Part shown: one piece after another, positions 16,001 to 60,873 of the stretch
How the letters are laid out: each line of letters begins with the position of its first letter
How positions within the stretch are numbered: position 1 is the first letter of the stretch
Assembly (NCBI RefSeq): GCF_006345805.1
Contig: NC_043008.1
Coordinates: 50,716,001-50,780,000, forward strand
Length of the DNA: 64,000 bases
Reading direction: 5' to 3'
Origin: Octopus sinensis
Lineage: Eukaryota
Notes under the pieces: model-generated
The model's database searches: none
What the model was told of the DNA's origin: nothing
What the model saw: the letters and a program-made list of their open reading frames with translations, nothing else
Made by a program: the position numbers and the translations under genes

Positions 16001-19000
16001 TTGGGGAAACTCGGAATCTTGGGGTTTAGTAGCACTACACCATATGCCTGTGGGCATATGGCGTAGTGGTTAAGAGCGCAGGCTACTAACCTCAAGATTC
16101 CAAGTTTGATTCCAAGCAGTGACCTGAAGAATAACAACAACAATAATAATAATAATAACATCGAAAAAAATACCTTAGGAATGAGAACCCAGGTTCGAAA
16201 TTTCCCCAAGACACCTGATGAAGGCTGGAGGGTTTATCAGCAGAAATGTTGTGTTAACAACAAACAAGATGAGGACGAATATCCATCAAATGTAAATAAT
16301 GTAAATAATGTACATAATTCCTCATCTCTTAAAGAAAAATCTGTTGTTTGAAACTCTCTTTTGATCTTGTCTATCTCAATACCAGTAAACTTAGATATTG
16401 TCATCAGTTTTGCCCTTTCAAGGAAGCTTTTTTTTTGTTTGTTAGTTTTTAAAGAGCCGAAGCCAGTGCCGGCCGAAGCCAGTGCCGGCCGAAGCCAGTG
16501 CCGACCGAAGCCAGTGCCGGCCGAAGCCAGTGCCGGCCGAAGCCAGTGCCGGCCGAAGCCAGTGCCGGCCGAAGCCAGTGCCGGCCGAAGCCAGTGCCGG
16601 CCGAAGCCAGTGCCGGCCGAAGCCAGTGCCGCCTCGACTGGCTTCCGTGCAGGTGGCACGTAAAAAGCACCCACTACACTCACGGAGTGGTTGGCGTTAG
16701 GAAGGGCATCCAGCTGCAGAAACATTGCCAGATAAGACCGGAGCCTGGTGCAGCCTTCTGGCTTCCCAGATCCCCGGTCGAACCGTCCAACCCATGCTAG
16801 CATGGAGAACGGACGTTAAACAATGATAATGATGACAAACTAATTATGCTGTGAACCATTTCAGTAATTACTAAACTCGTTTTTTTTTCATATTAAACTA
16901 GGAATTAGCAGACAGACTTGCTGCTATGTTGAACTTCAACCTCCAACAACTGTGTGGCTCCAAATGTAAAAACTTGAAAGTGAAAAATCCTGACAAATAT
17001 GGCTGGGAACCGAAAAAGTTACTTGACCGGCTGACTGATATCTATCTTCACTTAGATTCAAGTGATGAATTTGCAGCAGCTATTGCTAATGATGAGGTAA
17101 GCAATCTCTGCCCAGCCCTCTGGCCCTCTCGGTCCATATGTCTGTCTGTCTGTCCGTCCGTTTGTCTGGCCATCTGTCTCTCTCTGCTTGTCTGTCTGTC
17201 TGTCTCTGCTTGTCTGTCTGTCTGTCTGTCTGTCTCCGCTTGTCTGTCCATCTCTGCTTGTCTGTCTGTCTGTCCCTCTCTGCTTGTCTGTCTGTCTGTC
17301 CCTCTCTGCTGTCTGTCTGTCTGTCCCTCTCTGCTTGTCTGTCTGTCTGTCCCTCTCTGCTTGTCTGTCTGTCTGTCTGTCCCTCTCTGCTTGTCTGTCT
17401 GTCTGTCCCTCTCTCTGCTTGTCTGTCTGTCTGTCCCTCTCTGCTTGTCTGTCTGTCTGTCTGTCCCTCTCTCTGCTTGTCTGTCTGTCTGTCCCTCTCT
17501 GCTTGTCTGTCTGTCTGTCCCTCTCTGCTTGTCTGTCTGTCTGTCCTCTCTGCTTGTCTGTCCTGTCTGTCCTCTCTGCTTGTCTGTCTGTCTGTCTGTC
17601 CCTCTCTGCTTGTCTGTCTGTCTGTCCCTCTCTGCTTGTCTGTCTGTCTGTCCCTCTCTGCTTGTCTGTCTGTCTGTCTGTCCCTCTCTGCTTGTCTGTC
17701 TGTCTGTCCCTCTCTGCTTGTCTGTCTGTCTGTCCCTCTCTGCTTGTCTGTCTGTCTGTCCCTCTCTGCTTGTCTGTCTGTCTGTCCCTCTCTGCTTGTC
17801 TGTCTGTCTGTCCCTCTCTGCTTGTCTGTCTGTTTGTCCCTCTCTGCTTGTCTGTCTGTCTGTCCCTCTCTGCTTGTCTGTCTGTTTGTCCCTCTCTACT
17901 TGTCTGTCTGTTTGTCCCTCTCTGCTTGTCTGTCTGTTTGTCCCTCTCTACTTGTCTGTCTGTCTGTCCCTCTCTGCTTGTCTGTCTGTCCCTCTCTGCT
18001 TGTCTGTCTGTCTGTCTGTCCCTCTCTGCTGTCTGTCTGTCTGTCTGTCCCTCTCTGCTTGTCTGTCTGTCTGTCCCTCTCTGCTTGTCTGTCTGTCTGT
18101 CCCTCTTTGCTTGTCTGTCTGTCTGTCTGTCTGTCCCTCTCTGCTTGTCTGTCTGTATGTCCCTCTCTGCTTGTCTGTCTGTCTGTCCCTCTTTGCTTGT
18201 CTGTCTGTCTGTCTGTCCCTCTCTGCTTGTCTGTCTGTCTGTCCCTCTCTGCTTGTCTGTCTGTCTGTCCCTCTCTGCTTGTCTGTCTGTCTGTCTGTCC
18301 CTCTCTGCTTGTCTGTCTGTCTGTCTGTCCCTCTCTTCTTGTCTGTCTGTCTGTCCCTCTCTGCTTGTCTGTCTGGAAGAGGGTATTTATTTTCCAATTG
18401 TTGTTGTTCTTTATCACCTTTTTTTGTCTCAGTTCCCTTGACCTATGACCATTCCATCTTAATATGTCTATGTCTACATTATCCAATATCTTTTTTTTTT
18501 TCTAAAATGAACGTAGTGCATGCTTTGAGGTAAATTTAGCTGCTACTTCTTGCAAGTTACACTATTACAAAGTTGCTTCCCAGATGGCTCATAGTGTGAT
18601 ATTCTCTCTCTCTCTTTCTCTCTCTCTCTAAATTTTTTGATTGGTATATATCAGATTACATTGTGTCTCTTCACATTGTACAAATAATTCCATTGTAATT
18701 ATCTCCCCTTACTGGTAGCTTGCATGGTATGGTTGGAGTACTTGAAGTAATTGTATCTATGGCTTAGTGTTCCCTACTCATACCACCAAGATACTCAATA
18801 CCATGCAAACTAGAGCTAGCAGGGTTATGTAACCTTCATGAAAAAGGACGTGAAAGTTCAAACTAGGGAGCATGTGGTCAGGATTTTAATCCTGAGAAAA
18901 AGTTTGGAAATTTTTCTGATTTTAGTTAATTTCTTAAGAAAATGTCACTATTGCATCATGGGAGAATGTGTTGTTCTTTTGAGCTCAGGTTTGATCTAGT

Positions 19001-23351: not shown

Positions 23352-23632
23352 ATTTAAGAGATGAGGAATTATGTACATTATTTACATTTGATGGATATTT
23401 GTCCTCATCTTGTTTGTTGTTAACACGTTTCGGCTGATATACCCTCCAGCCTTCATCAGGTGTCTTGGGGAAATTTTGAACCTAGGTTCTCATTCCTAAG
23501 GTATTTTTTGATGTTGTTGTTATTATTATTATTATTATTATCATTATTATTATTATTCAGGTCACTGCCTGGAATCGAACTCGGAATCTTGGGGTTAGTG
23601 GCCTGCGCTCTTAACCACTACGCCATATGCCC
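23352..23632 (-). mobile_element. Family D SINE, copy 2 (full length)
   Basis: Intact A-box and B-box (GAGTTCGATTCC); HHR core at about 23422-23464; near-identical to copy 1. Confidence 0.85.
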
Positions 23633-23640
23633 ATAGCGTC

Positions 23641-23853
23641 ATGGTTAAGAGCGCGGGCTATTAACCCCAAGTTTCCGAGTTCGATTCCAGGCAGTGACCT
23701 GAATAATAATAATATCAAAAAATACCTTAGGAATGAGAACCCAGGGTCGAAATTTCCCCAATACATCTGATGAAGGCTGGAGGGTATATCAGCCGAAACA
23801 TTGTGTTAACAACAAACAAGATGAGGACAAATATCCGTCAAATGTAAATAATG
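23641..23853 (+). mobile_element. Family D SINE, copy 3, head-to-head with copy 2
   Basis: 5'-clipped tRNA head plus HHR at 23762-23807. Confidence 0.85.
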
Positions 23854-24360: not shown

Positions 24361-26881
24361 TTAAAGGACAAAAGGTAAAGTTGAGCTTGGCTGGGATTGA
24401 ACTAAAAACCTAAAGAGTTGGAACAAATGTTGTTTAGTAATTCATCTGATAGAGTAACAATTCTGTCAGTTCACCCACCTTTGTTTGGAACAGGAATTAA
24501 CATGGACTTTTGGTGGAAGGTTTTAACTTAGATCAAGAAGTTTGGATTACAGAACCAAGGGTAGAGTGAGGCAGTTTGGTATGAAAAGGGTTGAATTTGT
24601 GTTTATATGATTTCTTTACTACCCACAAGGGGCTAAACACTGAGGGGACGAACAAGGATAGACAAACGGATTAAGACGGTTACATCGATCCCAGTGCGTA
24701 ACTGGTACTTAATTTATCGATCCCGAAAGGATGAAAGGCAAAGTCGACCTCGGCGGAATTTGAACTCAGAACGTAGCGGCAGATGAAATACCGCAAAACA
24801 TTTCGTCTGGTGTGCTAATGGTTCTGCCAGCTCGCTGCCTTTTATGTTTATATAATTATATAATTTATGTTTATATGATTTGTTTCAGTCATTGGATTGC
24901 AGCCCCTGTAGGGACAATTCCTTGAGTTTAGTCAACTAGATTGCCTTTAATACTTGTTTAAAGTCAGGTACTAATTCTTTCAACATTTTTTTCTTGTAAA
25001 TTAAGGTACAGAGACATAAACAAACCAACACTGGATATGAATATGTAGAGTTCACTAAACAGGACAATAACAAAAAATTTATATTCATTTGTTTGTTTAT
25101 CATACATTTTTTGAGCAAGGAATTCTTATTCCACAGGTCTTTTGAAATTGTCATGTGATCCGGCAGAGTGCCAACTCAGAACGTCAGCATCATCACTGTT
25201 TTGTTGAAGCAGTGACAAAACTAGAATCTCAACTTTTCACCTCCACCATTTTATACATATATATCATCATCATCATTTAGCATCCGTCTTCCATGCTAGC
25301 ATGGGTTGGACGGTTCGATCGGGGTCTGGGAAGTCAGGAGGCTGTACCAGGCTCCAGTCTGATCTGATATATATGTGTGTTTGTGTGAAGGTGTGTGGCT
25401 TAGTGGTTAGGGCATTTGACTCACAATTGTAAGTTCATGAGTTCAGTTCCTGACGACATGTGTCCTTAAGAAGGAAACTTTATTTCACGTTGCTCCACTC
25501 CACTCAGCTGGCAAAAGTGAGTTGTACTTGTATTGCAAAGGGCCGGCCTTGTCACACTGTGTCATGCTGAATCTCCCTGAGAACTATGTTGAGGGGATGT
25601 GTCTGTGGAGTGCTCAGCCACTTCATGTTAATTTCACGAGCAAGCTGTTCTGTTGAATGTAACAGCTGGGGTCCTTGTTGCAACCGATAGCGCTCCATAT
25701 ATATATATATATATATATATGTGATGGCGCATGGCTCAGTGGTTAGAGTGTTGAGCTTACGATCGTGAGGTTGTGAGTTCGAATCCCAGACTGAGCTGCA
25801 TGTTGTATTCTTAAGCAAGACACTTTATTTCACGTTGCTCCAGTTCACTCAGCTGTAGAAATGAGTTGTGACATCACTGGTGCCAAGCTGTATCGGCCCC
25901 TTTGCCTTTCCTTTGGATTACACTGGTAGCGTGGAGAGGGGAGGCTGGTATGCATGGGTGACTGCTGGTCTTCCATAAACAACCTTGCCTGGACTTGTGT
26001 CTAGGAGGGTAACTTACTAGGTGCAATCCCATGACCAGTCATGACTGAAGGGGCTCTCAGCATATATATGTGTATAAATAGATAAAAATCATCATCCAAA
26101 ATCTGTTTTTCATGCTGGAATGGATGGTTTGACTGGATCTGGTAAGTCCAGAGGATGCACCATCTTCCTTTGTCAGCTTTGGTATGGTTCCTACAGCTGG
26201 ATGTCCTTCCTAACACCAACCACTTTACAGAGTGTACTGGGTGCTTTTTTACATGCTACCAGCACTGGTATCAATTCTGTTGTAGTGGACAGGGTGCTAA
26301 AATACACACACAAACTGACAGAGCAGTTGCCTCATCTTGTGAGATAACCATCTTGCATTATGATGGAGAGACATCTGAACATCACTGGATTTAAGTGACA
26401 AAAGCTTGTACAACACCTGCAGCTCACTCGGTTGCCACAATAGGTTCCAGTGACAAGAAAAGCAATATGACTAGTACTGTGACCTTTGTCAGCCCCATAG
26501 ATGGTGCCTTGAGAAGTATTGCTGTTCTGGGTCAGAATGGACCTAGGAGCTGTGGTATTAAGGGGTGACTCCATGCTCCCTACAATTCCAGAATTCCCAA
26601 ACTGGAGCCCTCACCACCAGATGCAGTTTAATGTGAGACCTAGGATACCAAATTCCCTCGAAACATTGATGGGCTTGGGGCTCTACTAGAAGACACTTGC
26701 CCATGATGTGCAGTGGGACTGAACCAAAAATTCTTGTTAAGAAAACAGCTTAGCCAACCATGAACAAAGCCTGTGGCTATATATATATATATATATATAA
26801 AATTGTTAAAGACGACAACAAATGTTAAGGCAAGACAAACATCTCAAGTCACAGACATTATTATTATTGGAAAAATTCAAA

Positions 26882-28749: not shown

Positions 28750-28875
28750 TATATATATGTATGTATGTATATGTATGTATATGTACAGTATGTATGTATG
28801 TATGTATGTATAAATATATATGCATATATATATGTATGTATAAATATATATGTATGTATATATATATATATATGC

Positions 28876-28956
<81 letters not shown>

Positions 28957-29584
28957 TATATATGCATATATATATATATGCATGTATATATATATGCATA
29001 TATATATATATATATGCATATATATATATATATATGCATATATATATGCATATATATATATATATGTATGTATATATATGCATATATATATATATATGTA
29101 TGTATATATATGTGTATGTATATGCATATATATATATATGTGTATGTATATGCATATATATATATGTATATGTATGTATATATATGTGTATGTATATGCA
29201 TATATATATATGTATATGTATGTATATATATATGTATATATATATATATGCATATATATATATGTATATGTATATATATATATGCATATATATATATATA
29301 TGTATATGTATGTATATATTGTATATATATATATATATATATGCATATATATATATATGTATATGTATGTATATATATGCATATATATATATATGTATAT
29401 GTATGTATATATATATGTATATGTATATATATATATGCATATATATATATATATGCATATATATATATGTATATGTATGTATAATAGTATATATATATAT
29501 ATGCATATATATAATATGTATATGTATGTATATATATGTATATTATATATATGCATATATATATGTATGTATATATATAATATG

Positions 29585-29615
<31 letters not shown>

Positions 29616-30448
29616 TATATATATATGCATATATATATTATATGTTATGTATGTATATATATGTGTATATATATGTATGTATATATATATATGTATATAT
29701 ATGCATATATATAGATATGTATATGTATGTATATTATGTGTATATATCAATATATATATAATGTGTATATATATGCATATATAATATATGTATATGTATG
29801 TTATATATGTGTATATATATATGCATATATGTATATGTATGTATATATAGTGTATATATATATGTATATGTATATATATGTGTATATATATTGCATATAT
29901 ATATTGTATGTATATATATATGTGTATATATATATGCATATATGTATATGTATGTATATGTATATATGGTGTGTAATATATGTATGTATATGTATATATA
30001 TATGTGTAGGTATGTATATAGATAGTATATATATGTATGTATATATGTATGTATATTATATATATATATGTATGTATATATATAATGTGTAATGTATATA
30101 TATATGTGTATGTATATATATATGTGTGTATATATATATGCATATATATATATATATATATGTGTGTGTATATATATATATGCATATATATATATGTATG
30201 TATATGTATATATATATGTGTATATATATATGTATATATATATATATATATGTGTGTGCATATATGCATGTATATATATGTATATGTATATGTGTGTGTG
30301 TATATATGCATGTATATATATGCATATATATATATATGTATATACATAAGTATATATACATATATGCATATATATAAGTATATATGTATATATATATATA
30401 TGCATATACACGTATATATATATATGTAGATACATATATACACGCATG

Positions 30449-30485
<37 letters not shown>

Positions 30486-30560
30486 TATATATATATATAT
30501 ATATGCACATATATCTACATATATATACATACATACATACGTACACACACACACATGCAT
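28750..30560. repeat. About 1.8-kb (TA)n/(TATG)n/(TGCA) microsatellite
   Basis: Directly visible; source of many spurious I/Y/H/M/C ORFs. Confidence 0.98.
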
Positions 30561-31779
30561 ATATTGTTGAATGCTCAAAATGAGGAGTAGATAGGCAGCC
30601 GACAACTGATGAAGGATCCTTTCTCTGTGTTTACTTGTTCTATTCTCTATTATTTCCTCGCTGTTTGCTGTTTGAACGGTTGGTGACGTCCTGTACCCAT
30701 ATATGCATGTATATATTTATATATATATAGATATGATTTACTATTTATTTAATTGAATGTCACGGATCCATTTCCAAGTAAGTTTTTCCTCATCCTTTTG
30801 ATGCGACTCTTTACTCTCTTCTGTTTTCTTCCTCCATCCTCTAATTCCCTTTTTCTCCCCTATGTCCTTCACCATTTTCTGTCTGTCTGTCTCTCCTCCG
30901 CTCTTTCCCTCTCCCTTCCTCTCTCTCTTCTCTCTCTCGTTGCTCACACGTGTCCATCGTCCATCTTTCTTTTCCTTCACGGACGTTCAAAAGAACGGGC
31001 GTTTTTTTCTCTCTCTTCTATCTTTTCTCTTTTCAAAAAATGTTTCTCCCAGCGTTCACCATTTTCCTCTCGTTCTGGTCTAACGACCCTCCATATTTGT
31101 TTTCGTTCGGTTTCCTCGTATGTCTCCACTGTCATGTTTTTGTTCCAGACTATGACCTTCCATAAATCCTAAATTTTATTTTATGATTTATGGAAGTAAC
31201 TGCCTTTGAAGACCGATATTGTCGTTGAATGCTCGAAATGAGGAGTAGACAGACAGCCGACAAGTGATGAGGGTCTTTTCTCTGTGTTTACTTGTCCTGT
31301 TCTACATTTTTTTCCTTCGTTGTTTACTATTTAAATCGTTTGCTTACTTATTCCATGTTGTTTGAACCATTGGTGACGTCCTGTTCCCACATATGCACGT
31401 ATATATATTATTTACTATTCATTATATATATATATTACTTATCTTATATTAAACTTTTTAATACTTTTTGATAGTTATATATATTTAAATTTATAAAAAA
31501 AATTTTTTAATTAAAAGTTTAAAAGTTTAAAAATTTTTGAATTTAAAATTAAAAAAATATATAAAAAATATAAAAATTTATAAATATAAATTAGAAATTT
31601 TAAATTTAAATAATTTAAAATTCAAATTTTATATTTTATATATTTTGTATATTATATTAATTATATTTATTTTTATGTATTGGTTTATGTTTTTCACTGT
31701 TTGATTTGCCTAATAATGGTTTTATCTCTAATATAATTTATATATATATATATTATATATATATATGCATACACACACA

Positions 31780-33292: not shown

Positions 33293-33397
33293 TATTAATA
33301 AAGCATATTACTCTACCTTTGGTATTCGAGTACTATTTTTTCCACCTCGTTTCGCATTTATGTGCTTACTCTGGTATATATATATATATGTGTGTGT

Positions 33398-33476
<79 letters not shown>

Positions 33477-33757
33477 CACACAGACACACACATACACACA
33501 AGCACACAGAGACAATATTTCATTTAATTTATTGTTTGGGCAATATCTAATATGTATGGAAATCGTTTGCATATTGTTTCAATATGTATTTATACTCTTT
33601 GTGAATCCCTTCATTCCACATTGCTTTTTTGTGGACATTCTTTTCTGAAAATTGTCTCATATACAGGATTACCATATTCCAAGATTACCAAATTGCTTAG
33701 AGATTATAAGATTACCAGACAACCAGATTACTAACCTGCCAGACTGCCGGACTAACA

Positions 33758-33915
33758 ATGCCACGCCTCATATCAGCTCGGTCTGACGTCACAGATTCAG
33801 AAATGGATAAAGAAGCTCTAAGAGAATTCAAAGAACTCAAAGAGCAATATTATTTAATGGAAAATGATCGAAATGACTCTACTGAGAAAACTCAGAAAAT
33901 TCTTCGAAAGTACAG
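33758..33915 (+). CDS. CCDC63: CCDC63-like coding exon 1, [17 protein letters not shown]...ILRKYR
   Basis: ATG in aacaATG context, gtaaga donor; resembles the MPR..SARSD N-terminus of the family. Confidence 0.8.
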
Positions 33916-36900
33916 GTAAGAAAATCTCTCTAACACTTATACCTTTCCCTTATAATCACAATGTATTAAAAAAATATATGTATATTTATTGATATTTAGC
34001 AGAAGCAACGGAGTGAGTCAAAGGCGTATAGTTTCGTGCGTTAGAACTTATCAAACTTATTGCTTCTGGTTATAGAACCTGTGATTGTATGGCACTATAT
34101 TTTCTATATATTGCAAGCGAGATCAGACTAATACCTATTTCTTTATTACCCACAAGGGGCTAAACACAGAGGGGACAAACAAGGACAGACAAACGGATTA
34201 AATCGATTACATCGACCTCAGTGCGTAACTGGTACTTAATATATCGACCCCGAAAGGATGAAAGGCAAAGTCGACCTCGGCGGAATTTGAACTCAGAACG
34301 TACGGCAGACGAAATACGGCTACGCATTTCGCCCGGCGTGCTAACGTTTCTGCCAGCTCGCCGCCTTAGATCAGACTAATGCCATGACTGGCAAACGAGT
34401 GCCCACCGCTGAAGAGATCCAATAAGATCGAAATCACGCGATCTGGTGGTTGCAGGAGTTCTCTCCCGCTTGCAATGAATATCAAGTGCGAAAGCGTACT
34501 GAATAACCAGCTAGTGGAGATATCTTCCTGGGGTTAAAACAGCAGTATCGTCAGTTTTTTGAGAACACACACGTTAAAATGAAGATAATCAATACTCTAT
34601 ATACTCATATTTTGAGTTCTACTTTTCCTGTTTGCACCACCAAACCGATATTTATATTTATAGGCACAGGAGTGGCTGTGTGATAAGTAGCTTGCTTACC
34701 AACTATATGGTTCCGTGTTCAGTCCCACTGCATGGCACCTTGGGCAAATGTCTTCTACTATAGCCTCGGGCCGACCAAAGTCTTGCGAGTGGATTTGGTA
34801 GACGGAAACTGATATAAACTTTGATATAAACTTCCATCAAAAGTTCATGCTAACCCCATTGATACCATCTTGCCTGAGACTTCTCTTGGTTCTACGATAC
34901 AAACTCCTGGTTTTAAAGTGATCCAAACAACTTCCAACAAAATTTCATAGGCACAGGAGTGGCTGTGTGGTAAGTAGCTTGCTTACCAACCACATAGTTC
35001 CGGATTCAGTCCCATTGCGTGGCACCTTGGGCAAGTGTCTTCTATTATAGCCTTGGGCTGACCAAAGCCTTGTGAGTGGATTTGGTAGATGGAAACTGAA
35101 AGAATCCCATCAAGTATATGTATATATATTTATGTGTATGTGACTTTGTGTCTCTGTTCCTCCACCATTGTTTGACAACTGATGTTGGTGTGCTTATGCC
35201 CCTGAAACTCAGCGGTTCGGCAAAAAAGATCGATAGAATAAGTACTAGGCTTACAAAGAATAAGTCTTGGGGTCGATTTGTTTGACTAAAGGCGGTGCCC
35301 CAGCATGGCCGCAGTCAAATGACTGAAACATGTAAAAATGTAAATGTAAAAAATATGCGGCGCATGCGTGGCTATTACTGCAACTCATTAACAGTTGATT
35401 GGACGGAGCAACATGAAGGGAAGTAAATATTTTGCTCAGAAAAATAAAAAAAAACGTGACGCACTGCCCTGCCTAGGAATTGAAATCACGATCTTATGCT
35501 TGTGAGTGCAATCACTATGCCACACGGTTAGGCACAGACGCTTACAAAACCTCACCTGTAACTGATTACCAACAGATGGAGTGGAATTTTATCACTGAGC
35601 AAGCCGCAAAGATTGGACAAAATTGTTTTTGATATTTCATGATTATTAAGAAACAAGAAAAGAGAATTTAAGAGTTTATGCGTTTCATTGACTGTTTCAA
35701 GATTTAAATGTAAAAAATCTTAATCTATTTCCCATCAAGATATGAAATTTCTATATTGGAAGCGGAGAGGGAAGAAATAAACAAAGAACTATCTCTTGCT
35801 GAATGTGAAAGTAACCAACGTTTGGACTTGAAGAATGCTGCGATATTGAAGAATTTATCTAAAACAAAAGGTAAAGAGTAGTTATTTAAATAATCTTAGT
35901 TTGGTCGGTAAAAGAGAGCAATAGAGTACAATAGAGTATGATAAAGTACTGTTCATTTGCAGGCCTGTTTTAGTAATTTATTGTCTTCACTGGGTGAAGC
36001 AATATATTAGGCCTCTTAAATACCTCTTTATTGGTGGGCTACCCTCAGGCCCCCGGGATCCGAACGATTTCTGGGTAAGCGCTATATGCAACCGGTCCTT
36101 AAGATGGCACTGTTTATATTTGTGTCAAACACTGCTATGGCTACAGTTCCGTACTGGCCTCGAAAATCAAATAAAGAAGGTTATTAAGGACAGACAAAGG
36201 GATTAAGTCGATTACATCGACCCCAGTGCGTAACTGGTACTTAATTTATCTACCCCGAAAGCATGAAGGGCAAAGTCGACCTCAGCGGACTTTGAACTCT
36301 GAACGTAGCGGCAGACGAAATACCGCTAAGCATTTCGCCCGGCGTGCTAACCATTCTGCCAACTCACCACCTTAGTATCTTTCATGAGTATCTTTCTTGG
36401 TCTCTGCCTGTCTGCCTATCTCTGTCTTTGTCTGTCTCTGTCTCTCTCTTTCTTCTTTGAATACTTACTTTGTTCTATCTTTCTTGTGGCTATCACCTTC
36501 AGTCTGTCTATCTGCCCCATGTCTGCCTTCCTAAATCACTCTCTCATATCTCCTTCCTTGGTCTATGTCTTCCACGCTATCGCATTGCGTCTATTTCGTC
36601 TAAGGCTATATTATCACGGATTATCTCTTACCGATAATATTTTTAGATATATTATCATGGACTACTTCTTATAAATAAGATCCATGAATATACCAATGTG
36701 TATTTTCTCTGACATTAATTCATGTGTGTTTTTCTGTTACAGATAATATCGATTTAGATATCCAGAAAGTAAGGGAGATAATCAACGACTTGGACCAGCA
36801 GTTAACCGACTGGATGCGGAAGCAGAAGGAATGGAATCAGATTTATGGCAGCTTTGGTAAGAACTTAAAATATAGCGTTGCCGTGGAGAAAACCATCAGA

Positions 36901-37696: not shown

Positions 37697-39118
37697 ATAT
37701 ATGTCATGTTTCAAAATGGTAATGGTTTGATTTGGAAAATATCATAGAAGATTTACTTTGAATTATTTACCACAAAACTGGCCTTTGAGTACTCTGGGTC
37801 ATAAGGTCGAAGGTCATGAAGGTTACCCTTACTAGGCAGTGAATTGACAGAATCGTTAGAACGTTGTATAAAATGCCTTGTGGTATTTGTTTTGACTCTC
37901 AGTGTTCCCGCCGGGGTGAGCTTTTATTTTCATCATTTTGAGGTCGGAAAAGAAAAAAAGAAAAATACCAGTCTTGGTGGGGTGGAATGGCCGAACTGGT
38001 AAAGTCTGAGCAAGGGTAAGATGCCTGGTAGTATCCATTCGAGGTCTTTGGGTTATGATAATTCTCTCTATGATCAAAGACATTCTTCTATCTGTGAACA
38101 GCGTCCCTTAATTTCAGACAATGGATACCGTATTATCCAATGCAGTACCCATTTTTTTTAAAGGTGGCAGAGTATGAAACAATGTTGATGAGTGTGTAGT
38201 GGGGGTGATTCCACTGCTGTTTTTCGATGATCGAGCGACCATTCAAAGTAGTAGTCCCCAATCTCTTTTACATTACGAACCGGTTTCACTCAAGTTAATT
38301 TTTTCATACACCATGTGATCACAAGCAAAACAAAAACATGATAAAGTGCATAATATATTTTTTAAATTTCGTTTTTGGATTTGGTTTGCAAGATTCTTTA
38401 TATGAGTTCGTTTGTTGAAGTATATTCTGTTGTGTCTGGAGAGAGTCATTTTCTTTTTGTGCCTTATAATATAACACAATCACCGCGAAAATTTTAGGAA
38501 AATAAAACTAAATAAGTGGAAATTTTACAGGTAAGTGTGTTATATTATAAGGCACAAAAAGAAAATGACTCTCCCCAGACACAACAGAATATAATTTAAT
38601 TATTACGTATATAATACAAATGTATTTCATATGTAATGAATATACAATACAAAAACACTCTGCAGTCTGCGTTAGTCAGAAAAATAGATATAACATTTTA
38701 GGATGTATTCTTTCTCTGCGGTTTGACACTGGTTTGTAGTCCGGTAGTTGTGGAACCCAAATGTAAACGACTCCCTAATTATTGACATTGAATAATTTGT
38801 TGTATTGCAGACATGTAAAAAATTCAATCATTATTTGACTGAAAACCGCCACCTGCGCCAAAAAATCGATTCTTTGAAAGCCGAAAAGGAGAAGTTTGAT
38901 GTGATCCATCAAAAACTCGAGAAAGAGTACCACCACATTCGCCAGAATATTATTCATCTTGTAGAGAAATCAACACAAGCCTACAGTTACAGGTAAAGTT
39001 ACTCTGTTGGGCAGACGGCTTTGGTCTTTTACTTGTTTCACTCATTGGACTTCTCACGGACACAACGTGAGGATCGTGAGCCGAATGCTCTAACCACTAA
39101 GCTACACACACACGCACA

Positions 39119-39162
<44 letters not shown>

Positions 39163-39288
39163 CCACACACATACAGACACACATACACACACACACACGC
39201 ATACACACACACACACACACAAACACGCACATACACACACACACACAGACACACGCACACACACACAGACACACAGACAAACATACAG

Positions 39289-39321
<33 letters not shown>

Positions 39322-39452
39322 CACACAGACACACAGACAAACATACAGACACACACACACACACAAACACACACAAACACACACACAAACACACACACAC
39401 ACATACACACAGACACACGCACACACACACAGACACACAGACAAACATACAG

Positions 39453-39508
<56 letters not shown>

Positions 39509-41054
39509 ACGCACACACACACAGACACACAGACAAACATACAGACACACACACACACAAACACACACACAAACACACACACACACACACACAGACACAC
39601 GCACACACACACAGACACACAGACAAACATACAGACACACACACACATACACACACACACACAAACACACAACACACACACACACATGCGTATATGTATA
39701 TTATTTTATTCTGTTATTCTTTTAATTGTTTCAGTCATTTCGACTGCAGCCATGCTGGAGCACTACATTTAGTCGAACAAATCGCCCCCCCCCCAGGACT
39801 TATTCTTTGCATGCCAAGCTTAGTACTTATTCTATTGGACTCTTTTGCCGAACCGCTAATGTTACGGGGACGTAAATACACCAACATCGGTTGTCAAGTG
39901 ATGGTGGGGGACAAACACGGGGACACACACACACACACGCACACACACACATACGACGAGCTTCTTTCAGTTTCCGTCTACCAAATCCACTCACAAGGCT
40001 TTGGTCGGCCCCCGAGGCTATAGTAGAAGACACTTGCCCAAAGTGCTACGCAGTGGGATTGAACCCGGAACCATGTGGTTGGTAAGCAAGCTACTTATCA
40101 CACAGCCACTTCTGCACCTGTATATATACATACATACATACATACATACATACATACATACATACATACAAATATAAGTATATGTATATATATAAATATA
40201 TCTTACTGCTTGTCTAATTACTAATTTTGTTTCTGCAAAACATCAGGGAAGATGCGCAGAACCGAATGGTTGTTATTGGAGAAAAGTCTGAGAAAGACAT
40301 CGCACAGCACCATGCTGACATGAAGGAATTGGTACGCATCATTGACCATGATCGAAAGTTGCGAGATTTTATGAATCTGAAATCCAGAGAACGACAAGAA
40401 GATTCGGGAACTCTTGCATGGCGACAGAAAAGAGGTAAGAACTTATGCTTCATTCAACATCATCATCATCACCACCACCACCACCACCATCATCATCATT
40501 ATCTTCATCATCATCATCATCATCATCATCGTCATCGTCATCTTCATCGTTGTTGTTGTTGTTGTTGTTGTTGTTATTATTATTTTGGTTTGGTTCAGGT
40601 TCGGTCTTATTCCTGGCAGGATTTATGTGGGTAGCGGGTAACCTTAGGTATCCACAAGTTTTCAGCTGACTTTCAAGTGTTTAAAACCCTCCTGATAATC
40701 TTTGCTGCCCCTAAGGGACAAAATACATGCATACATATTGAGAAATCGACAGTTACTCTATCCAGATTACAACTTCAGGTTTATACCTGTAATTATTGGG
40801 ACCCCGGGATATGTATCACACTGCCTAAATACCAATCTTGAGAAATTAGGCTTCTCAAAACCAGAAAAGAGAAAGCTATTTTGAAGACTACAAATCCAAA
40901 CCGTCACTGGAACTGTAGAAAGCTGTAAAACTTTCCAGAAGTTTATCATTTAAATATACACGAGCATGTCTAGATATGCAACTATATGCATGAGAATGTA
41001 TACATAAAGCAAAACATACACATCTGCACAAATGCATACACACACACACACACA

Positions 41055-42280: not shown

Positions 42281-43168
42281 TACATACACAAAGAAAGAGA
42301 GACAAGCAGAGAGACAGAAAGACAGAATGACAGAGACAGACAGACAGGCAGACAGAAGGAGAGAGTGAGAGAGATGAGGAAGGAGAGAGTGAGAGAGAGA
42401 GAGAGACAAGCAGAGAGACAGAAAGAGAGAATGACAGAGACAGACAGACAGGCAGACAGTAGGAGAGAGAGTGAGAGCGATCATTGATCAATTTAAGTCT
42501 TTCTCTTCTTCAAATTAATCTCTTGGTGCCTGCCTCCTTCGGTATTTCTACATTTTGTTGCCATGTTTGTATTATAGAGGTTTTGGAAGCTGAAAGGAAA
42601 AAGGAGAGCCAAGAAGACTCTGTGGAGAGATACGAAGCTGCTGTGGCAAGAATCAAAGCGATGACAGGCGAAGACAATTTGGATCTGGACGTACCAAAGT
42701 TCATTGAAGTGGAAGACAAAAACTTCGCCCTCTTCAATTATGTTAATGAGATGAACAGTGAAATCGAGTTGCTTAATGACCAGACGAAAGAGGTTTGTAC
42801 GCATGTTTGTTAAATGTCCATCCGTCCATCCATCCATCCATCCATCCGCCCGCCCGTCCGTCCGTCCGTCCATCTATCTATCCATCCATCCATCCATCCA
42901 TCCGTCCGTCCGTCCGTCCGTCCGTCCGTCCGTCCGTCCGTCCATCCATCCATCCGTCCATCCATCCATCCGTCCGTCCATCCATCCATCCGTCCATCCA
43001 TCCATCCATCCATCCATCCGTCCGTCCGTCCGTCCGTCCGTCCGTCCGTCCGTCCGTCCATCCATCCATCCGTCCATCCATCCATCCGTCCATCCATCCA
43101 TCCGTTCATCCATCCATCCATCCATCCATCCGTCCGTCCGTCCGCCCGTCCGTCCGTCCGTCCGTCCG

Positions 43169-43201
<33 letters not shown>

Positions 43202-45344
43202 CTTTGCCGCCAACTATTTCTGTGAGGGTCGTGGGGGAAGGGACCTCAGGCATCTTCACCATTGGGTCGAGCGCATATTGTCACCTCTCTTTTTCATAAT
43301 TTTTTTAATGAACAGGATTGACATGTGCAGCCGTTGTCGAAATGATATAACCATCAATCGATCGATCGATCCATCCGTCTGTCCGTCCATCGATCGATCG
43401 ATCCATCCATCCAGCTATCCATCCATCCGTTTATCTATTTATTTTCATCCTCTCAGGTGCAATAAAATACATCAATCGATGGCGGTAGATTGCCTGGGTT
43501 GTTAGAGGATCGGATAAAATGCCTTACAGTATATGTAACAATTCTTTGCGTTCTGCTGGCAATGCCTGTGACGTCACTGGTGCTAACCTTTATCGGTATT
43601 TAAGTAAATTATCTCTGTTGGGTAACATTGGTGGCAGAGAGGAGAGGACTTTTGCCGATACGAGCAACCGCTAGGCTTCCTAAAGAAAATACTGTTACCC
43701 AGGGCCTATGCATTTAACTGCACATAAATGATGAGCCTTGACTGACGGTGGCTCAAGAATAGAACTTTCAACGTGAAATTACGCCCTACGTATCATGGAA
43801 TGAGTTTAGAATTGATCAATTTCGTCATTTTTACAACTCACCAAGAGTTCATTACAATCTCAAAAAGAAGACAGCTGAAGAATCTAGTAGAAAGATAAAT
43901 ATTAAAATTCATTATGGCATAAAATGTTTAATTCATTGCTTCTTTCTGATTGTGACACCAGCCAGCAGTTTTGAGGGAAAAGTTGGCCCCGGTCTGATTT
44001 GAGCTCAGAACGTAAAGAATCGGCAGAAATGCTGCTAAGCACTTTCTGTGATGAGCTAACGATCCTGTCTTATGGTTTCAAATTTTGGCACAAGCAATTT
44101 TAGATGAAGTATGCTAGTCAATTACATCGGCTCCAGTACCCGACTGGCACTTTATTTTATCGACCCTGAAAGGATGAAAAGTAAAATTGACAGTGGCAGG
44201 ACTTGAGCTCAGAATGTAAAGAATAGAAAAAATGCCTCTAAGCATTTTTCTTGGATGCGCTAATGATTCTAAGAGCTTGCCGCCTTTGAGTAAAATTCTT
44301 AATGAAAACATACATTGTAGTTTGTTATCTAAAATAAGTAAGAAGATTTCTGATCAGCCTCTTTGTTTCATAACAGGATGGACCATGAATTGTAAAGCCT
44401 TGGAAGCACTCCGTCGGTTACGACGACGAGGGTTCCGGTTGATCCGATCAACGGAACAGCCTGCTCGTGAAATTAACGTGTAAGTGGCTGAGCACTCCAC
44501 AGACACGTGTACCCTTAACGTAGTTCTCGGGGATATTCAGCGTGACACAGAGAGTGACAAGGCCGGCCCCTTGAAATACAGGTACAACAGAAACAGGAAG
44601 TAAGAGTGAGAGAAAGTGGTGAAAGAGTACAGCAGGGATCACCACCATCCTCTGCCGGAGCCTTGTGGAGCTTTAGATGTTTTCGCTCAATAAACACTCA
44701 CAACGCCCGGTCTGGGAATCGAAACCGCGATCCTACGACCGCGAGTCCGCTGCCCTAACCACTGGGCCATTGCGCCTCCACTGAATTGTAAAGCTGTTAA
44801 CTACTGAATCAAGACATTTATTTCTGTATTAGTCACAATTTGAATGAAACAAAAATCATTGAATATTAAAAATTTCGTTTGAAAATTATGAGCAACCTTG
44901 TTTTAACAGATCCAAAAAGACATCGAGAATTTCCAGCATGAAGGTGCTCAGCTTGACTTCGAGCGGAAGAAGATTTTAAATGAACTGGAATCGCTGAGGC
45001 TGGAAGTGTCCAAAGATATATCAATCAAAGAAGAATCGGTCAAAGAAATTTCAAAGATATTCGATCAAATTAAAACTGGTAAGATTTTCTTTGAATGAGT
45101 CACTCTCATTCTTCTGCGAAATAATTATAAAAGAAATATCTATTCTTATGTTTTGAGTTCTAAATCGTTGGCAATTTTTTCCCTCCGTCTTTTTTTTTTC
45201 GCTTTGCCTTTCCTTTGTTTCCGGTTTCTAAAGAAGAGCGTTTGCTCGAAACGTTAAACCACCTTTCTTTCCTTCCCTGAGCGTCTGCTAATACTTTGCA
45301 TGTACCACGTCCTCGCGTTGTTTTTGTTCTTGCGTTTGTTCTTC

Positions 45345-46247: not shown

Positions 46248-46841
46248 CGTCATCATCCTCATCCTCATCCTCATCATGATCCTCCTCCTCATCCTCCTCA
46301 TCATCATCATCTTCGTCGTCCCCATTTCTTTACTGCCCACAAGGGCTAAACACATAGAGGGGACAAACAAGGACAGACAAACGAATTAAGTCGATTACAT
46401 CGACCCCAGTGCGCAACTGGTACTTAATTTATCGACCTCGAAAGGATGAAAGGCAAAGTCGATCTCGGCGGAATTTGAACTCAGAACGTAGCGGCAGACG
46501 AAATACCGCTAAGCATTTCGCCCGGCGCGCTAACCACTCTGCCAGCTCGCCGCCTTATAATTCCCACCACCACCACCACCATGTGAGTTCGATTTTGTTT
46601 ATAACTTCACAGAGTGCACCGGGTGCTTTTCGTGGCACCACCGCTGGTGTGAGGTCTCCGAGCACTCGTAAGACAAGATCCTTCAAGTGAGTGGGTTTTG
46701 TATAGAAGGATATATGAAAGTATGACAGGGAGGGACAAAAGCAGGCTCAAGTGTCTCGCTGAAAAAGTGAATACGTGGTTTCTTCATTTGGAAATAGAGA
46801 GAAGGAAATAAATTAATACATAAAGAGAGGGAGAGAGAGTG

Positions 46842-47365: not shown

Positions 47366-50300
47366 CATCGTCATTGTCATTATTGTTATTAATTGCAGAA
47401 TCAGTTGACCAACGACCCCAAATTTAAAGAAAGCGAAGAATCAGACCCAAGGAATGCTTTAGGCAATATTTCATTCCTTCCTCCTTCAATCGGGCAAGTA
47501 GCAAACACTTTTTCTTTTAATAAAAAAACGGAAACTCTCCCTCTTCCCCTCTCTGTCTGTCTGTATGTCTGTCTGTCTGTCTCTGTCTGTCTCTCTCTCT
47601 CTCTATTAATTTAGCTTTTGTATTTGGTTTGCAAGATTCTTGATGTGAACTCAGGTGTTGAAACATATTTTGTTGTACCTCGAGAGGGTCATTAGGCCAA
47701 AAATAAACACACGCATTGGTTCTATTTCACATCTTTTATTATTATTAGCTAATTGCTTAACCATCTATTTAATTAACTTATGAAATGTTTAATTAATACT
47801 TCGATCAATCAATTAATCAACTTGGTTAGTCAAAGTCTTTTCGTTGCCATTCGTGACCTCACCAATGATACACCCTCCCCACATTAGGTCTGCTTCAGTG
47901 CTGTTTTACACCGGGAGTAGAGATCGCATGTCATTGATGTTAGATTAGGGATTTCTGGAAATTTTTCATGAGCCCCGGCGCAATAGTCCTTCCGAATAGA
48001 CCGACCAGCTGGTTTTCATCGACGCCTAGAATTTTCCCGAGAACATCGTCGCTTTTGAATTTGGTTTGCAAGATTCTTTATATTCTGTTGTGTCTGGGGA
48101 GAGTAATTTTCTTTTTGTGCCTTATAATGTAACACACTCACCGGTAAAATTTCCGCTTATTTCTTATTTTTTATTTATATTTTCCTAAAATTTTCGTTGC
48201 GTCCTGCAACCTTTTCAATAGTCTTTTCAAGACTATCGAAAAGGTTACAAAACGCAACGAAAATTTTAGGACAATAAAAATAAGAAAAAATGGAAATTTT
48301 ACCGGTGAGTGTGTTACATTATAAGGCACAAAAAGAAAATGACTCTCCCCAGACACAACAGAATCGTAGCTTTTATTCGCCACTAATCGTCTATAGAATG
48401 CAATTAGGGACCTTTCAGCAAACGCATTGCCTAATTTATAGAGGACTGTGAGCGTTTGATATTTCAGAAACCAAGCGTCTTGTTTCGGTCTTTGCTTGAC
48501 CCATTACTGCATCCTTATGAAAGAGACGAGCAGTGAGAGAACGAGAGTGATAAACGGTGACCACCCCCCACTAAACCACCGTTAAGCAATCGTTGGAGAT
48601 GTCACTTAGATAACTTAGATATGTTTCGACCAAAGATTGGTCCAGGCCATGTCTAACTTAATAGCACCACCTGATAGGATTATTCGAATCCTGTTTAAGT
48701 CAAGTTTTGTTTAAGTCAAGTTTTGTTCAAGTAGTGAGTTCTTGTTGGGTGAGTTGTATCCAATTATGGGTGGCTTATCTGGTATTCTTTTAAGGAATCT
48801 ATCCAGGCTCCGTTTAAAGTTGATGGGATCCTTTTCTTCTTTGATCTCTTTCGGGACAATGTTAAATAGGGTAGGGCCTGTTGAGGAAAAGAAATTATGT
48901 TGCAGTGTACATGTATGTTGTGATCTTGAATTGGGCAGGGGACGTATGGCCCGTGATCCCAGTCTTGGATGAACCTTGAAGCTAATGTTAAGGTCGTTTG
49001 GGCAAAGTTGGCGGTATATTCTCCACATCGTACAAATGATGTACCGCTCACGGCGACGCTGGAGGGAGTAAAGTTTCAAGGCTTTAAGGCGATTCCAATA
49101 ATCGAGAGCAGCCATGCATAGAGATGTTTTTAACATCGCCGCTATTTATTGATTTCAAATTTTGTCACAAGACCAGCCATTTCGTGTAAGCCGATTACAT
49201 CGACTTCAGTGTTCAACTGGTACTTATTTTATCGACCCCCTAAAGAATAAAAGGCGAAGTCGACCTCGGCGGAAATTTGAACTCAGAACGTAAAGACGGA
49301 CGAAATACCCATTTCTTTACTACCCACAAGGGACTAAACACAGAGAGGACAAACAAGGACAGACAAACGGATTAAGTCGATTACATCGACCCCAGTGCGT
49401 AACTGGTACTTAATTTATCGACCCCGAAAGGATGAAAGGCAAAGTCGACCTCGTCGGAATTTGAACACAGAACGTAGCGGCAGACGAAAATACCAGTAAG
49501 CATCTCGCCCGGCGTGCTAACGTTTCTGCCAGCTCGCCGCTATTTACTGCAGCGGTGGTGATGCTGCTGCTGCTGATGATGGTTATTATCCATAATTTCC
49601 TTTTTGTTGCCTTTGTTGTTGCTGCTGATTCTTATTTCTTTATTGTCCACAAGAGGCTAAACACAGAAGGGACAAACAAGGACAGACAAAGGGATTAAGT
49701 CGATTACATTGGCCCCAGTACGTAACTGGTACTTAATTTATCGACCCCGAAATGATGAAAGGCAAAGTCGACCTCGGCGTAATTTGAACTCAGAACGTAA
49801 CGGCAGACGAAATACGGTTACGCATTTCGCCCGGCGTGCTAACGTCTCTGCCAGCTCGCCGCCTTTGTGTGGCAAAATTCTTCCCACACAGACATACCTG
49901 CGCCACAATAAAAGCAAAGAGAGGCAGCTGTGGGAAATACTTTTTGTAGGCGTTGATCCGACGGCCATTCGTAACCACCATTTGTGACACCATGTTTCTT
50001 TTGAAGAATTGTTAAGTTGAAAAAGAAAATAAACAAATTCCGCCTCGAAAGGTGCTGGTGGTGGAGGGGACAAAAAAAACAACAACAAAAAACAAAAGAC
50101 AACAATAGGCGCAGGAGTGGCTGTGTGGTAAGTAGCTTGCTAACCAACCACATGGTTCCGGGTTCAGTCCCACTGCGTGACATCTTGGGCAAGTGTCTTC
50201 TGCTATAGCCCCAGGCCGACCAATGCCTTGTGAGTGGATTTGGTAGACGGAAACTGAAAGAAGCCTGTCGTATATATGTATATATATATGTGTGTGTCTG

Positions 50301-53727: not shown

Positions 53728-53772
53728 CCGCCTGATGAAACGAGTGGTTTCCGAAACAAACGTTTGTCGCGG
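53728..53772 (+). ncRNA. Hammerhead relic with damaged stem II
   Basis: CCGC CUGAUGA aacgagugguuucc GAA ACAAACGUUUGU C/ GCGG: perfect stem I and a 12-nt palindromic stem III; stem II appears to have lost 2-3 nt. Confidence 0.5.
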
Positions 53773-60334: not shown

Positions 60335-60374
60335 CTACACTAGTTTCGCCTATCAGTCGTAGGCTCGTCAGTAG
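60335..60374 (-). ncRNA. Minimal type I hammerhead motif (C17G variant copy)
   Basis: CUA CUGACGA GCCUA-cgacuga-UAGGC GAA ACUAGU G UAG; the consensus with the 60874 copy is fully canonical. Confidence 0.6.
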
Positions 60375-60790: not shown

Positions 60791-60831
<41 letters not shown>

Positions 60832-60873
60832 TGACAGGGGAGATAGCCGCCCTACTCGAACGTTTCAGTAGTC

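What the first reader, a model, noticed from the sequence alone, without database searches (positions are those of the whole stretch)
34388..34455. Fully canonical, extended type I hammerhead ribozyme in sense orientation inside the first coding intron of the ciliary CCDC63/ODAD1-like gene
Seen in the sequence: CCACCG-CUGAAGA-GAUC(CAAUAA)GAUC-GAA-AUC(ACGC)GAU-C|UGGUGG. Every catalytic-core base is intact (G10.1-C11.1, A15.1-U16.1, AUC cleavage triplet after 34443). Stem III has a real 4-nt loop, so it could fold as a monomer. Stem I extends through an asymmetric internal loop (ACGAGUGC) to a distal GCAA/UUGC helix. Established: that architecture supports the loop II-stem I tertiary contact of fast natural HHRs such as Schistosoma Sm-alpha, and intronic HHRs are known in amniote genes such as RECK. 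Inference: it could cut the pre-mRNA co-transcriptionally about 530 nt after the exon 1 donor and so tune splicing or output of a motile-cilia/sperm gene. It is the only undamaged HHR among about 14 in the window.
Basis: partly seen in the sequence, partly recalled or inferred. Interest (0 to 1): 0.85.

Follow-up and report, generated by a model that had tools for sequence, protein, structure and literature searches.

The report
Leftover hammerhead ribozyme in octopus intron
An intact-looking self-cutting RNA motif (hammerhead ribozyme) really does sit in the first coding intron of an octopus cilia gene, but it looks like a leftover of a mobile element: the same site in a sister octopus species has a broken catalytic core, so it is probably ordinary.

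Summary
Window 34403-34449 (+) is a complete type I hammerhead: helix I 6 bp, helix II 4 bp, helix III 3 bp, every core base canonical, cleavage after C34443. It lies in sense orientation in intron 1 (33917-35737) of an ODAD1/CCDC63 gene. The window is Octopus sinensis CM016870.1.

It is the only canonical hammerhead in the 64 kb, against 0.018 expected by chance. Rfam HH9 scores it at 35 bits, below the family's gathering score of 52.

The functional reading is not supported.
- The orthologous site in O. bimaculoides has A9->U in the catalytic core.
- Substitutions in the motif (2 of 47) do not differ from the intron background of 7.4% (P=0.31).
- No change between the two species is compensatory.
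- The active three-helix fold makes up 0.03-0.08% of the predicted ensemble, against 15-31% for the HH9 consensus.

The motif has the standard metazoan retroelement architecture. In its empty-site form it sits in a roughly 125-nt hairpin, later split by a SINE. The window also holds two other hammerhead families, both in inverted pairs as described for Penelope-like element remnants.

Most likely it is a solo relic of a hammerhead-bearing retroelement. Genome copy number could not be measured.

The parts
34403..34408 (+). Helix I, 5' strand (CCACCG)
   Evidence: Pairs with 34444-34449 (5 G-C/A-U pairs and one G-U).
34409..34415 (+). Catalytic core C3-A9 (CUGAAGA). A9 = 34415, which is U in O. 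bimaculoides.
34416..34429 (+). Helix II GAUC/GAUC with loop CAAUAA. Close to the HH9 consensus GCUC-CAAAAA-GAGC.
34430..34432 (+). Core G12 A13 A14
34433..34442 (+). Helix III AUC/GAU with loop ACGC. In O. bimaculoides it reads AUCACGUGAU, a perfect 10-nt palindrome.
   Evidence: The palindromic helix III/loop is typical of metazoan hammerheads.
34443..34443 (+). C17. The predicted scissile bond lies between 34443 and 34444.
34444..34449 (+). Helix I, 3' strand (UGGUGG)
34400..34402 (+). Candidate distal helix I, 5' strand: UGC pairs with GCA 34452-34454, leaving a UU bulge at 34450-34451. This pairing is the one compatible with both O. bimaculoides substitutions.
   Evidence: Rfam HH9 alignment and substitutions at 34402 and 34451.
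34452..34454 (+). Candidate distal helix I, 3' strand (GCA), partner of 34400-34402
34105..34122 (+). Outer inverted arm, 5' side (..ATTGCAAGCGAG). It pairs with 34464-34481 and closes a roughly 125-nt hairpin once the SINE is removed.
   Evidence: the repeat finder I1: 18 nt, 83% complementary. The empty-site RNA folds at z = -3.55, with 0 of 200 shuffles as stable.
34464..34481 (+). Outer inverted arm, 3' side (CTCCCGCTTGCAAT..)
   Evidence: G34468->C in O. bimaculoides breaks a pair, and the fold z-score there is -1.38.
34133..34367 (.). SINE inserted 35 nt upstream of helix I, between the outer arm and the ribozyme. Target-site duplication AGATCAGACTAAT at 34120-34132 and 34368-34380. Present in O. 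sinensis and O. vulgaris, absent (empty site) in O. bimaculoides.
   Evidence: About 13 other copies in the window. Duplication is repeat finder D7. Empty site at L002 10375-10395. Present in O. vulgaris.
34657..35350 (.). Later insertions of a second SINE family downstream of the element. Absent in O. bimaculoides.
33758..33916 (+). ODAD1/CCDC63 coding exon 1 ([10 protein letters not shown]...RKYR); GT donor at 33917
   Evidence: Identical to O. vulgaris CAI9731373.1 and O. sinensis XP_029643781.1.
35738..35869 (+). ODAD1/CCDC63 coding exon 2 ([10 protein letters not shown]...). This sets the 3' end of intron 1 about 1.3 kb downstream of the cleavage site.

Best explanation
This is a solo relic of a hammerhead-bearing retroelement. 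The source was either a monomer derived from a non-LTR retrozyme or a truncated end of a Penelope-like element. It inserted into ODAD1 intron 1 before O. bimaculoides split from the O. sinensis/O. vulgaris lineage.

Shown here:
- The motif is complete in O. sinensis and O. vulgaris.
- The orthologous copy in O. bimaculoides has a core substitution.
- The motif evolves at the intron's background rate.
- A SINE later landed inside the element's outer hairpin.
- Other hammerhead families lie in the same 64 kb.

Inferred:
- The retroelement origin.
- The intactness in O. sinensis is survival by chance over modest divergence (about 7% between the species).
- If the RNA still self-cleaves, it does so as a by-product inside an intron that is spliced out and degraded anyway, with no selected effect on ODAD1.

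My estimate that the isolated RNA shows measurable self-cleavage in vitro is about 40%.
For: - The architecture matches the 'canonical metazoan HHR' as defined by Cervera & de la Pena 2014: helix I 6 bp, helix II 4 bp, short helix III with a small palindromic loop. That paper also reports that most such motifs are dispersed single copies, probably from truncated elements.
- Loop II is near-identical to the HH9 consensus. A review describes the amniote intronic hammerheads, which include HH9, as highly similar to those of metazoan retroelements.
- O. bimaculoides has the same insertion at the same site with A9->U.
- Substitutions are 2 of 47 in the motif against a 7.4% background, P = 0.31.
- No substitution is compensatory.
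- The empty-site form is a closed 125-nt hairpin, z = -3.55. The second hammerhead family at 60831-60965 has the same layout, z = -5.69.
- Both other families, at 60.3/60.9 kb and at 23.4/23.8 kb, occur as opposite-strand pairs a few hundred bp apart, as described for Penelope-like remnants.
- In Xenopus, about 44% of retrozyme-derived sequences lie in introns, so the location is unremarkable.
Against: - No second copy of this particular hammerhead family was found. There is none in the window, and I could not search the octopus genome, so the retroelement origin rests on architecture and analogy.
- No reverse transcriptase or GIY-YIG reading frame lies nearby.
- The element is not in tandem, so it fails the defining arrangement of an active retrozyme.
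- Only two independent lineages could be compared. Loss in O. bimaculoides does not exclude a function confined to O. sinensis/O. vulgaris.
Confidence: 0.74

Rival explanations
1. This is a lineage-specific regulatory ribozyme. In O. sinensis and O. vulgaris it cuts the nascent ODAD1 pre-mRNA 527 nt into intron 1, before the 3' splice site about 1.3 kb downstream is made. That lowers or tunes mRNA output, as proposed for the intronic CPEB3 ribozyme.
For: - All core bases and three helices are intact, in sense orientation in the intron.
- The sequence is identical in O. sinensis and O. vulgaris.
- Helix III is longer than in most metazoan hammerheads.
- There is a precedent: blocking the intronic Cpeb3 ribozyme raises CPEB3 protein expression, and its half-life is matched to polymerase transit time.
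Against: - The two species that share it are about 99% identical in this stretch, so identity carries no information.
- O. bimaculoides has A9->U, and the motif shows no rate reduction.
- The active fold is predicted at 0.03-0.08% of the ensemble, against 15-31% for HH9.
- A SINE has since been inserted 35 nt upstream, inside the element's closing hairpin.
- From memory, not checked here (Dye, Gromak & Proudfoot 2006, only cited): intron cleavage by a hammerhead need not reduce splicing, because exons stay tethered to the polymerase.
Confidence: 0.07
2. This is a chance match. The intron sequence happens to satisfy the hammerhead descriptor, and the A at position 9 arose by mutation in the O. 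sinensis lineage.
For: - The Rfam score is below the gathering score (35 against 52 bits).
- E = 4.3e-5 per 64 kb scales to about two hits in a genome of this size.
- The O. bimaculoides state has one core mismatch, and polarity cannot be set without an outgroup.
- Descriptor hits with one core mismatch occur about once per window by chance at loose stem limits.
Against: - Only 0.018 hits are expected per window even at loose stem limits, and the real stems are 6/4/3 bp.
- Helix lengths match the canonical metazoan form exactly.
- Loop II is near-identical to HH9, which the descriptor does not require.
- The motif sits at the centre of a significantly stable hairpin with 11-bp outer arms, like an independent hammerhead family in the same window.
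Confidence: 0.08
3. This is part of a still-active mobile element: a small non-autonomous hairpin unit of about 125 nt that carries a hammerhead and uses it for its own RNA processing.
For: - Two unrelated hammerhead units in the window share the layout of outer inverted arms, spacer, type I hammerhead, spacer and arm, with TA-rich flanks.
- The second family has two copies at 79% identity.
Against: - This copy is old, being shared with O. bimaculoides.
- It is interrupted by a SINE.
- It is single in the window.
- No tandem partner is present to release a unit-length RNA.
Confidence: 0.08

Closest known systems
Canonical type I hammerheads of metazoan non-LTR retrozymes and satellite-like repeats (Schistosoma Sm-alpha, newt satellite 2, mussel, coral; Cervera & de la Pena 2014, 2020)
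   Same: Type I topology, with helix I 6 bp, helix II 4 bp and a short helix III capped by a tetraloop (fully palindromic in the O. bimaculoides copy). The sequence context is AT-rich and the copy is dispersed. About 44% of such sequences in Xenopus are intronic.
   Different: There is no tandem repeat and no second unit nearby. The conserved UAC bulge of helix I is missing. Family copy number in octopus is unknown.
Rfam Hammerhead_HH9 (RF02275), the conserved intronic hammerhead of amniotes (RECK intron)
   Same: It is the best Rfam match (35 bits). Both are intronic and in sense orientation. Helix II and loop II are almost the same (GAUC-CAAUAA-GAUC against GCUC-CAAAAA-GAGC). Both have a 6-bp proximal helix I followed by an internal loop, and a 3-bp helix III with a small loop.
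   Different: The score is below the gathering score. The host gene and phylum differ. HH9 is defined by deep conservation at an orthologous site, whereas this one is already core-mutated in a congeneric species. The predicted active-fold occupancy is two to three orders of magnitude lower.
Minimal hammerheads in the terminal repeats of Penelope-like elements
   Same: Solo, dispersed and probably retroelement-derived. True minimal hammerheads of this kind are present in the same window (23763-23806, with damaged copies at 16215 and 23396), so such elements have been active in this genome.
   Different: The focal motif has a real helix III, a 4-bp rather than 6-8-bp helix II, and no bulged base before helix II. 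It is of the canonical, not the minimal, type.
CPEB3 intronic HDV-like ribozyme of mammals
   Same: A self-cleaving motif in sense orientation in an intron, proposed to compete kinetically with splicing.
   Different: It belongs to a different ribozyme class. CPEB3 is conserved across mammals and has experimental support. Here conservation fails and nothing has been tested.

Membership tests
Hammerhead ribozyme, type I | Invariant core: C3 U4 G5 A6 N7 G8 A9, G12 A13 A14, A15.1-U16.1, H17 | tested here: met
   All positions are canonical at 34409-34415, 34430-34433 and 34442-34443.
Hammerhead ribozyme, type I | Three helices around the core, helix I open, helices II and III capped by loops | tested here: met
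   Helices I/II/III are 6/4/3 bp.
Hammerhead ribozyme, type I | Score at or above the Rfam gathering score of a hammerhead family | tested here: not met
   No gathering-level match. The best is HH9 at 35 bits against 52.
Hammerhead ribozyme, type I | Loop II to helix I tertiary contact nucleotides | tested here: inconclusive
   Loop II is HH9-like and the internal loop starts after 6 bp. The UAC bulge is absent, and the distal helix is ambiguous between two pairings.
Hammerhead ribozyme, type I | Site-specific self-cleavage | not testable with these tools
   This needs in vitro transcription. Folding predictions put the active secondary structure at 0.03-0.08% of the ensemble, against 15-31% for the HH9 consensus.
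Domesticated intronic hammerhead (HH9/HH10 kind) | Sense orientation inside an intron of a protein-coding gene | tested here: met
   Intron 1 of the ODAD1-like gene, same strand.
Domesticated intronic hammerhead (HH9/HH10 kind) | Intact ribozyme conserved at the orthologous site across species | tested here: not met
   O. bimaculoides has A9->U. The O. vulgaris copy is identical, but the flanks are 99% identical too.
Domesticated intronic hammerhead (HH9/HH10 kind) | Slower evolution than flanking intron, or compensatory changes in helices | tested here: not met
   2 of 47 against a 7.4% background, P = 0.31, with no compensatory pair.
Non-LTR retrozyme | Canonical type I hammerhead of the metazoan form | tested here: met
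   Matches the published description.
Non-LTR retrozyme | Tandem repeats of a unit of about 150-450 bp, each with a hammerhead | tested here: not met
   The element is a single copy with no tandem partner. At most it is a monomer derivative.
Non-LTR retrozyme | Multiple related copies in the genome | not testable with these tools
   No octopus genome search was available. Exact ORF look-ups, an ORF homology search and DNA pattern scans all came back empty.
Penelope-like element terminal repeat | Adjacent RT/GIY-YIG reading frame, or a second hammerhead in tandem or inverted within a few hundred bp to 3 kb | tested here: not met
   Neither is present near 34.4 kb. Both other hammerhead families in the window do occur as inverted pairs.
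Penelope-like element terminal repeat | Minimal hammerhead form: long helix II, bulged base, no helix III | tested here: not met
   The focal motif has a 4-bp helix II, no bulge and a 3-bp helix III.

The most novel reading that the evidence does not exclude
The ribozyme is catalytically active in O. sinensis and O. vulgaris. Cutting the nascent transcript in intron 1 measurably lowers or times ODAD1 output in ciliated or sperm cells. That would be a recent, lineage-specific capture of a retroelement hammerhead by a host gene, with O. bimaculoides as a natural knockout.

A related reading: the roughly 125-135-nt hairpin units with a central hammerhead, seen twice in this window, are an undescribed class of small non-autonomous elements in cephalopods.
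Probability: 0.06. Interest if true: 0.55.

Novelty: new member of a known kind. Interest (0 to 1): 0.2.

Why it matters
Type I hammerheads are already known to be scattered through metazoan genomes as retroelement parts, and a few have been captured by host genes in amniotes. A full-text search for 'hammerhead ribozyme' plus 'octopus' returned no paper describing cephalopod hammerheads, so this adds a lineage. It also offers a convenient natural pair for testing whether an intronic hammerhead has any effect: an intact core in O. sinensis/O. vulgaris and A9->U in O. bimaculoides. As it stands, it does not change what is known. The evidence points to neutral decay of a mobile-element remnant.

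Tried and rejected
- Rfam at gathering score gave nothing. Whole-window Rfam at the E-value threshold was swamped by microsatellite 'miRNA' noise. Two sub-window runs recovered only one weak extra hammerhead hit, at 60338-60383.
- I looked for other octopus contigs through exact ORF look-ups of exon 1 and of the antisense ORF over the ribozyme. Neither is on record.
- I searched the protein collection with the 71-codon antisense open frame of the empty-site element as a proxy for other copies. There were no candidates, which is uninformative about copy number.
- Exact DNA pattern scans for the core plus helix II in the metagenome and viral collections gave 0 hits. These collections are not expected to hold octopus DNA.
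- A tRNA scan, run to look for a tRNA-derived promoter as in Sm-alpha, found none.
- No RT or endonuclease reading frame was recognised by eye among the ORF translations near the motif; the 1-28.7 kb listing also showed none. No profile search of these ORFs was run.
- The 2010 HH9 paper (PMC2933863) is not held. I used the 2017 review and the 2014 and 2020 papers instead.
- I considered building a covariance model from the two hammerhead families. MAFFT misaligned the 3' half of helix II and the tool cannot take a hand alignment, so I used my own descriptors with simulations instead.
- I rejected the idea that the ribozyme belongs to the upstream SINE. All SINE copies end at 34364-34370, and the O. 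bimaculoides site is empty while keeping the ribozyme.
Full report
**What is there**

Window 34403-34449 on the + strand reads CCACCG-CUGAAGA-GAUC(CAAUAA)GAUC-GAA-AUC(ACGC)GAU-C|UGGUGG. Every invariant hammerhead position is canonical:
- C3-A9 at 34409-34415
- G12-A14 at 34430-34432
- A15.1-U16.1 at 34433 and 34442
- C17 at 34443

In 1000 first-order Markov simulations of the window, the mean number of hits was 0.018, even with looser stem limits of 4/3/2 bp.

Rfam gives no match at gathering score. At the E-value threshold the best family is Hammerhead_HH9, at 35 bits against a gathering score of 52, with E = 4.3e-5 for the whole window. Scaled to a genome of about 2.7 Gb (size from memory), that is about two chance hits. 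The motif alone is therefore convincing for the window but not for a whole genome. The additional features described below make chance unlikely.

**Where it is**

The concatenated + strand exons match Pfam ODAD1_CC at 5.6e-74. They are identical, except for one residue, to Octopus vulgaris CAI9731373.1, whose 90%-identity cluster also holds O. sinensis XP_029643781.1.

The gene span (18,318 nt) and the offset of the ribozyme from the start codon match O. sinensis CM016870.1 exactly. The window is therefore O. sinensis, at about 50.716-50.780 Mb of that record.

Coding exon 1 is 33758-33916 and exon 2 is 35738-35869. I had first missed exon 2. The ribozyme is in intron 1, in sense orientation. 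It lies 527 nt after the donor and about 1.3 kb before the acceptor.

**Comparison with other species**

The O. vulgaris locus (L001) is 99% identical over 600 nt around the motif, so its identity says nothing.

The O. bimaculoides locus (L002) is informative.
- The same element is at the same place, so the insertion predates the split.
- The 235-bp SINE at window 34133-34367 is absent. Its site is empty and confirms the 13-bp target-site duplication AGATCAGACTAAT (D7).
- The two downstream SINE insertions (34657 to about 35350) are also absent.

Within the ribozyme, O. bimaculoides differs at two positions:
- A9->U (34415), a change in the invariant core.
- C->U in loop III (34439), which makes helix III plus its loop, AUCACGUGAU, a perfect palindrome.

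Just outside the ribozyme it differs at four more:
- C34402->U.
An alternative UGC/GCA helix (34400-02 with 34452-54), the one Rfam aligned, tolerates both the 34402 and 34451 changes.
- C34463->U.
- G34468->C, which breaks the outer arm.

Over the alignable part of intron 1 the substitution rate is 7.4%. In the ribozyme it is 2 of 47 (binomial P = 0.31). No change is compensatory. There is therefore no sign of selection on the ribozyme, and one lineage has lost a core base.

**Would it work?**

Helix III (3 bp plus a tetraloop) is somewhat longer than the 1-2 bp described as usual for metazoan hammerheads, which often need to dimerise. Monomeric folding is therefore conceivable.

However, the palindrome GAUC occurs three times: on both strands of helix II and on the 3' side of helix III plus C17. 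This allows a 6-bp competitor helix, AGAUCG/CGAUCU. In ViennaRNA ensembles, the three-helix active structure accounts for 0.03-0.08% of the population for 47-100-nt contexts. The Rfam HH9 consensus, treated in the same way, gives 15-31%. Nearest-neighbour models ignore tertiary contacts, so this is a caution rather than a verdict.

Loop II (CCAAUAAG) is close to HH9 (CCAAAAAG), and the internal loop of helix I begins after 6 bp as in HH9. The conserved UAC bulge is missing.

**What it comes from**

With the SINE removed, the ribozyme sits in the middle of a 125-nt hairpin closed by 11-bp arms (ATTGCAAGCGAG / CTCCCGCTTGCAAT, I1). Its fold has z = -3.55, with 0 of 200 shuffles as stable. The O. 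bimaculoides version has decayed to z = -1.38.

The window holds two other hammerhead families.
- **Family at 60.3-60.9 kb.** Site 60871-60923 (+) has helices of 7, 5 and 4 bp and one core change, U4->C. Its inverted homologue lies at about 60280-60423 (-), at 79% identity, and gives a weak Rfam Hammerhead_3 hit. Each lies in a roughly 135-nt unit with about 20-nt inverted arms between (TA)n tracts, with z = -5.69.
- **Family at 16-24 kb.** This three-copy repeat (16150-16330 +, 23356-23522 -, 23704-23853 +) carries a minimal hammerhead with a bulged base before a 6-bp helix II and no helix III. The copy at 23763-23806 has a perfect core, against 0.013 such hits expected by chance.

That form, and opposite-strand pairs 100-700 bp apart, are what Cervera & de la Pena 2014 describe for truncated Penelope-like elements.

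Hammerhead-bearing retroelements have therefore clearly been active in this genome. The focal motif has the canonical retrozyme-type form rather than the minimal one. Monomer derivatives of such elements are dispersed evenly in Xenopus, and about 44% of retrozyme-derived sequences there lie in introns.

**What I could not do**

I could not count copies of this family in the octopus genome. None of the collections on hand is searchable by octopus DNA, and the indirect routes gave nothing. The retroelement origin therefore rests on architecture, context and analogy.

**Mechanism and verdict**

The best-supported account is a retroelement-derived hammerhead that inserted into the intron in a common ancestor. 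It has since drifted: one lineage lost A9, and the other kept the motif by chance and acquired a SINE inside the closing hairpin.

If the RNA still cleaves, it cuts an intron that is destined for removal. An effect on mRNA would need cleavage fast enough to beat splicing over about 1.3 kb of transcription, as argued for the CPEB3 ribozyme. Nothing here suggests that it has been selected for this.

I put the relic explanation at about 0.74. The rivals are a lineage-specific regulatory role (0.07), pure chance (0.08) and a still-active mobile unit (0.08). It is a new example of a known kind, of modest interest.

Noticed in passing
window 60280-60423 (-) and 60825-60970 (+): A second hammerhead family occurs as a head-to-head inverted pair about 400 bp apart. 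Each unit is about 135 nt, has roughly 20-nt terminal inverted arms (TGACAGGGGAGATAGCCGC / GCGGTTATCTTCCCTGTCA) and lies between (TA)n tracts. The + copy has helices of 7/5/4 bp and a single core change, U4->C. The RNA fold has z = -5.69. It could be a Penelope-like remnant or a MITE-like unit carrying a hammerhead.
   Followed up: partly
window 16150-16330 (+), 23356-23522 (-), 23704-23853 (+): A three-copy repeat carries a Penelope-type minimal hammerhead: a bulged A, a 6-bp helix II and no helix III. The copy at 23763-23806 has a perfect core, so the focal motif is not the only undamaged hammerhead core in the window. A tRNA box-B-like GGTTCGAAAT lies about 30 nt upstream of the motif. Rfam does not detect these copies.
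   Followed up: partly
window 52953-52990 (+), 53732-53770 (+), 61380-61331 (-): Three further isolated hammerhead-like strings have damaged helix II or a damaged 10.1-11.1 pair. They have no homologues in the window and cannot be told apart from chance.
   Followed up: no
window 34133-34367 and about 13 other sites (e.g. 49304-49540, 46321-46557, 24610-24841): An abundant SINE of about 240 bp, at 72-93% identity between copies. The copy next to the ribozyme has a clean 13-bp target-site duplication and is absent in O. bimaculoides, so it was still active after that split. A second SINE family (e.g. 34657-34812, 34944-35099, 50105-50257) is similarly frequent.
   Followed up: partly
window 34366-34485 (-) and the empty-site reconstruction: The antisense frame across the ribozyme element is open for 71 codons in the O. 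sinensis empty-site reconstruction and in the O. bimaculoides sequence. No protein homologue was found. It is probably coincidence.
   Followed up: partly
window 55343-56490 (-) and 48711-49136 (-): Fragments of retrotransposon reading frames (an RT C-terminal region and a restriction-like endonuclease-type tail). By eye neither looks Penelope-like. They were not classified.
   Followed up: no
window 28750-30600, 33380-33500, 39100-39690, 42800-43230, 17000-18450: Long microsatellite and minisatellite tracts ((TA)n/(TG)n and 12-24-nt units) generate dozens of spurious sub-threshold Rfam miRNA matches (mir-297, mir-466, mir-3149).
   Followed up: no
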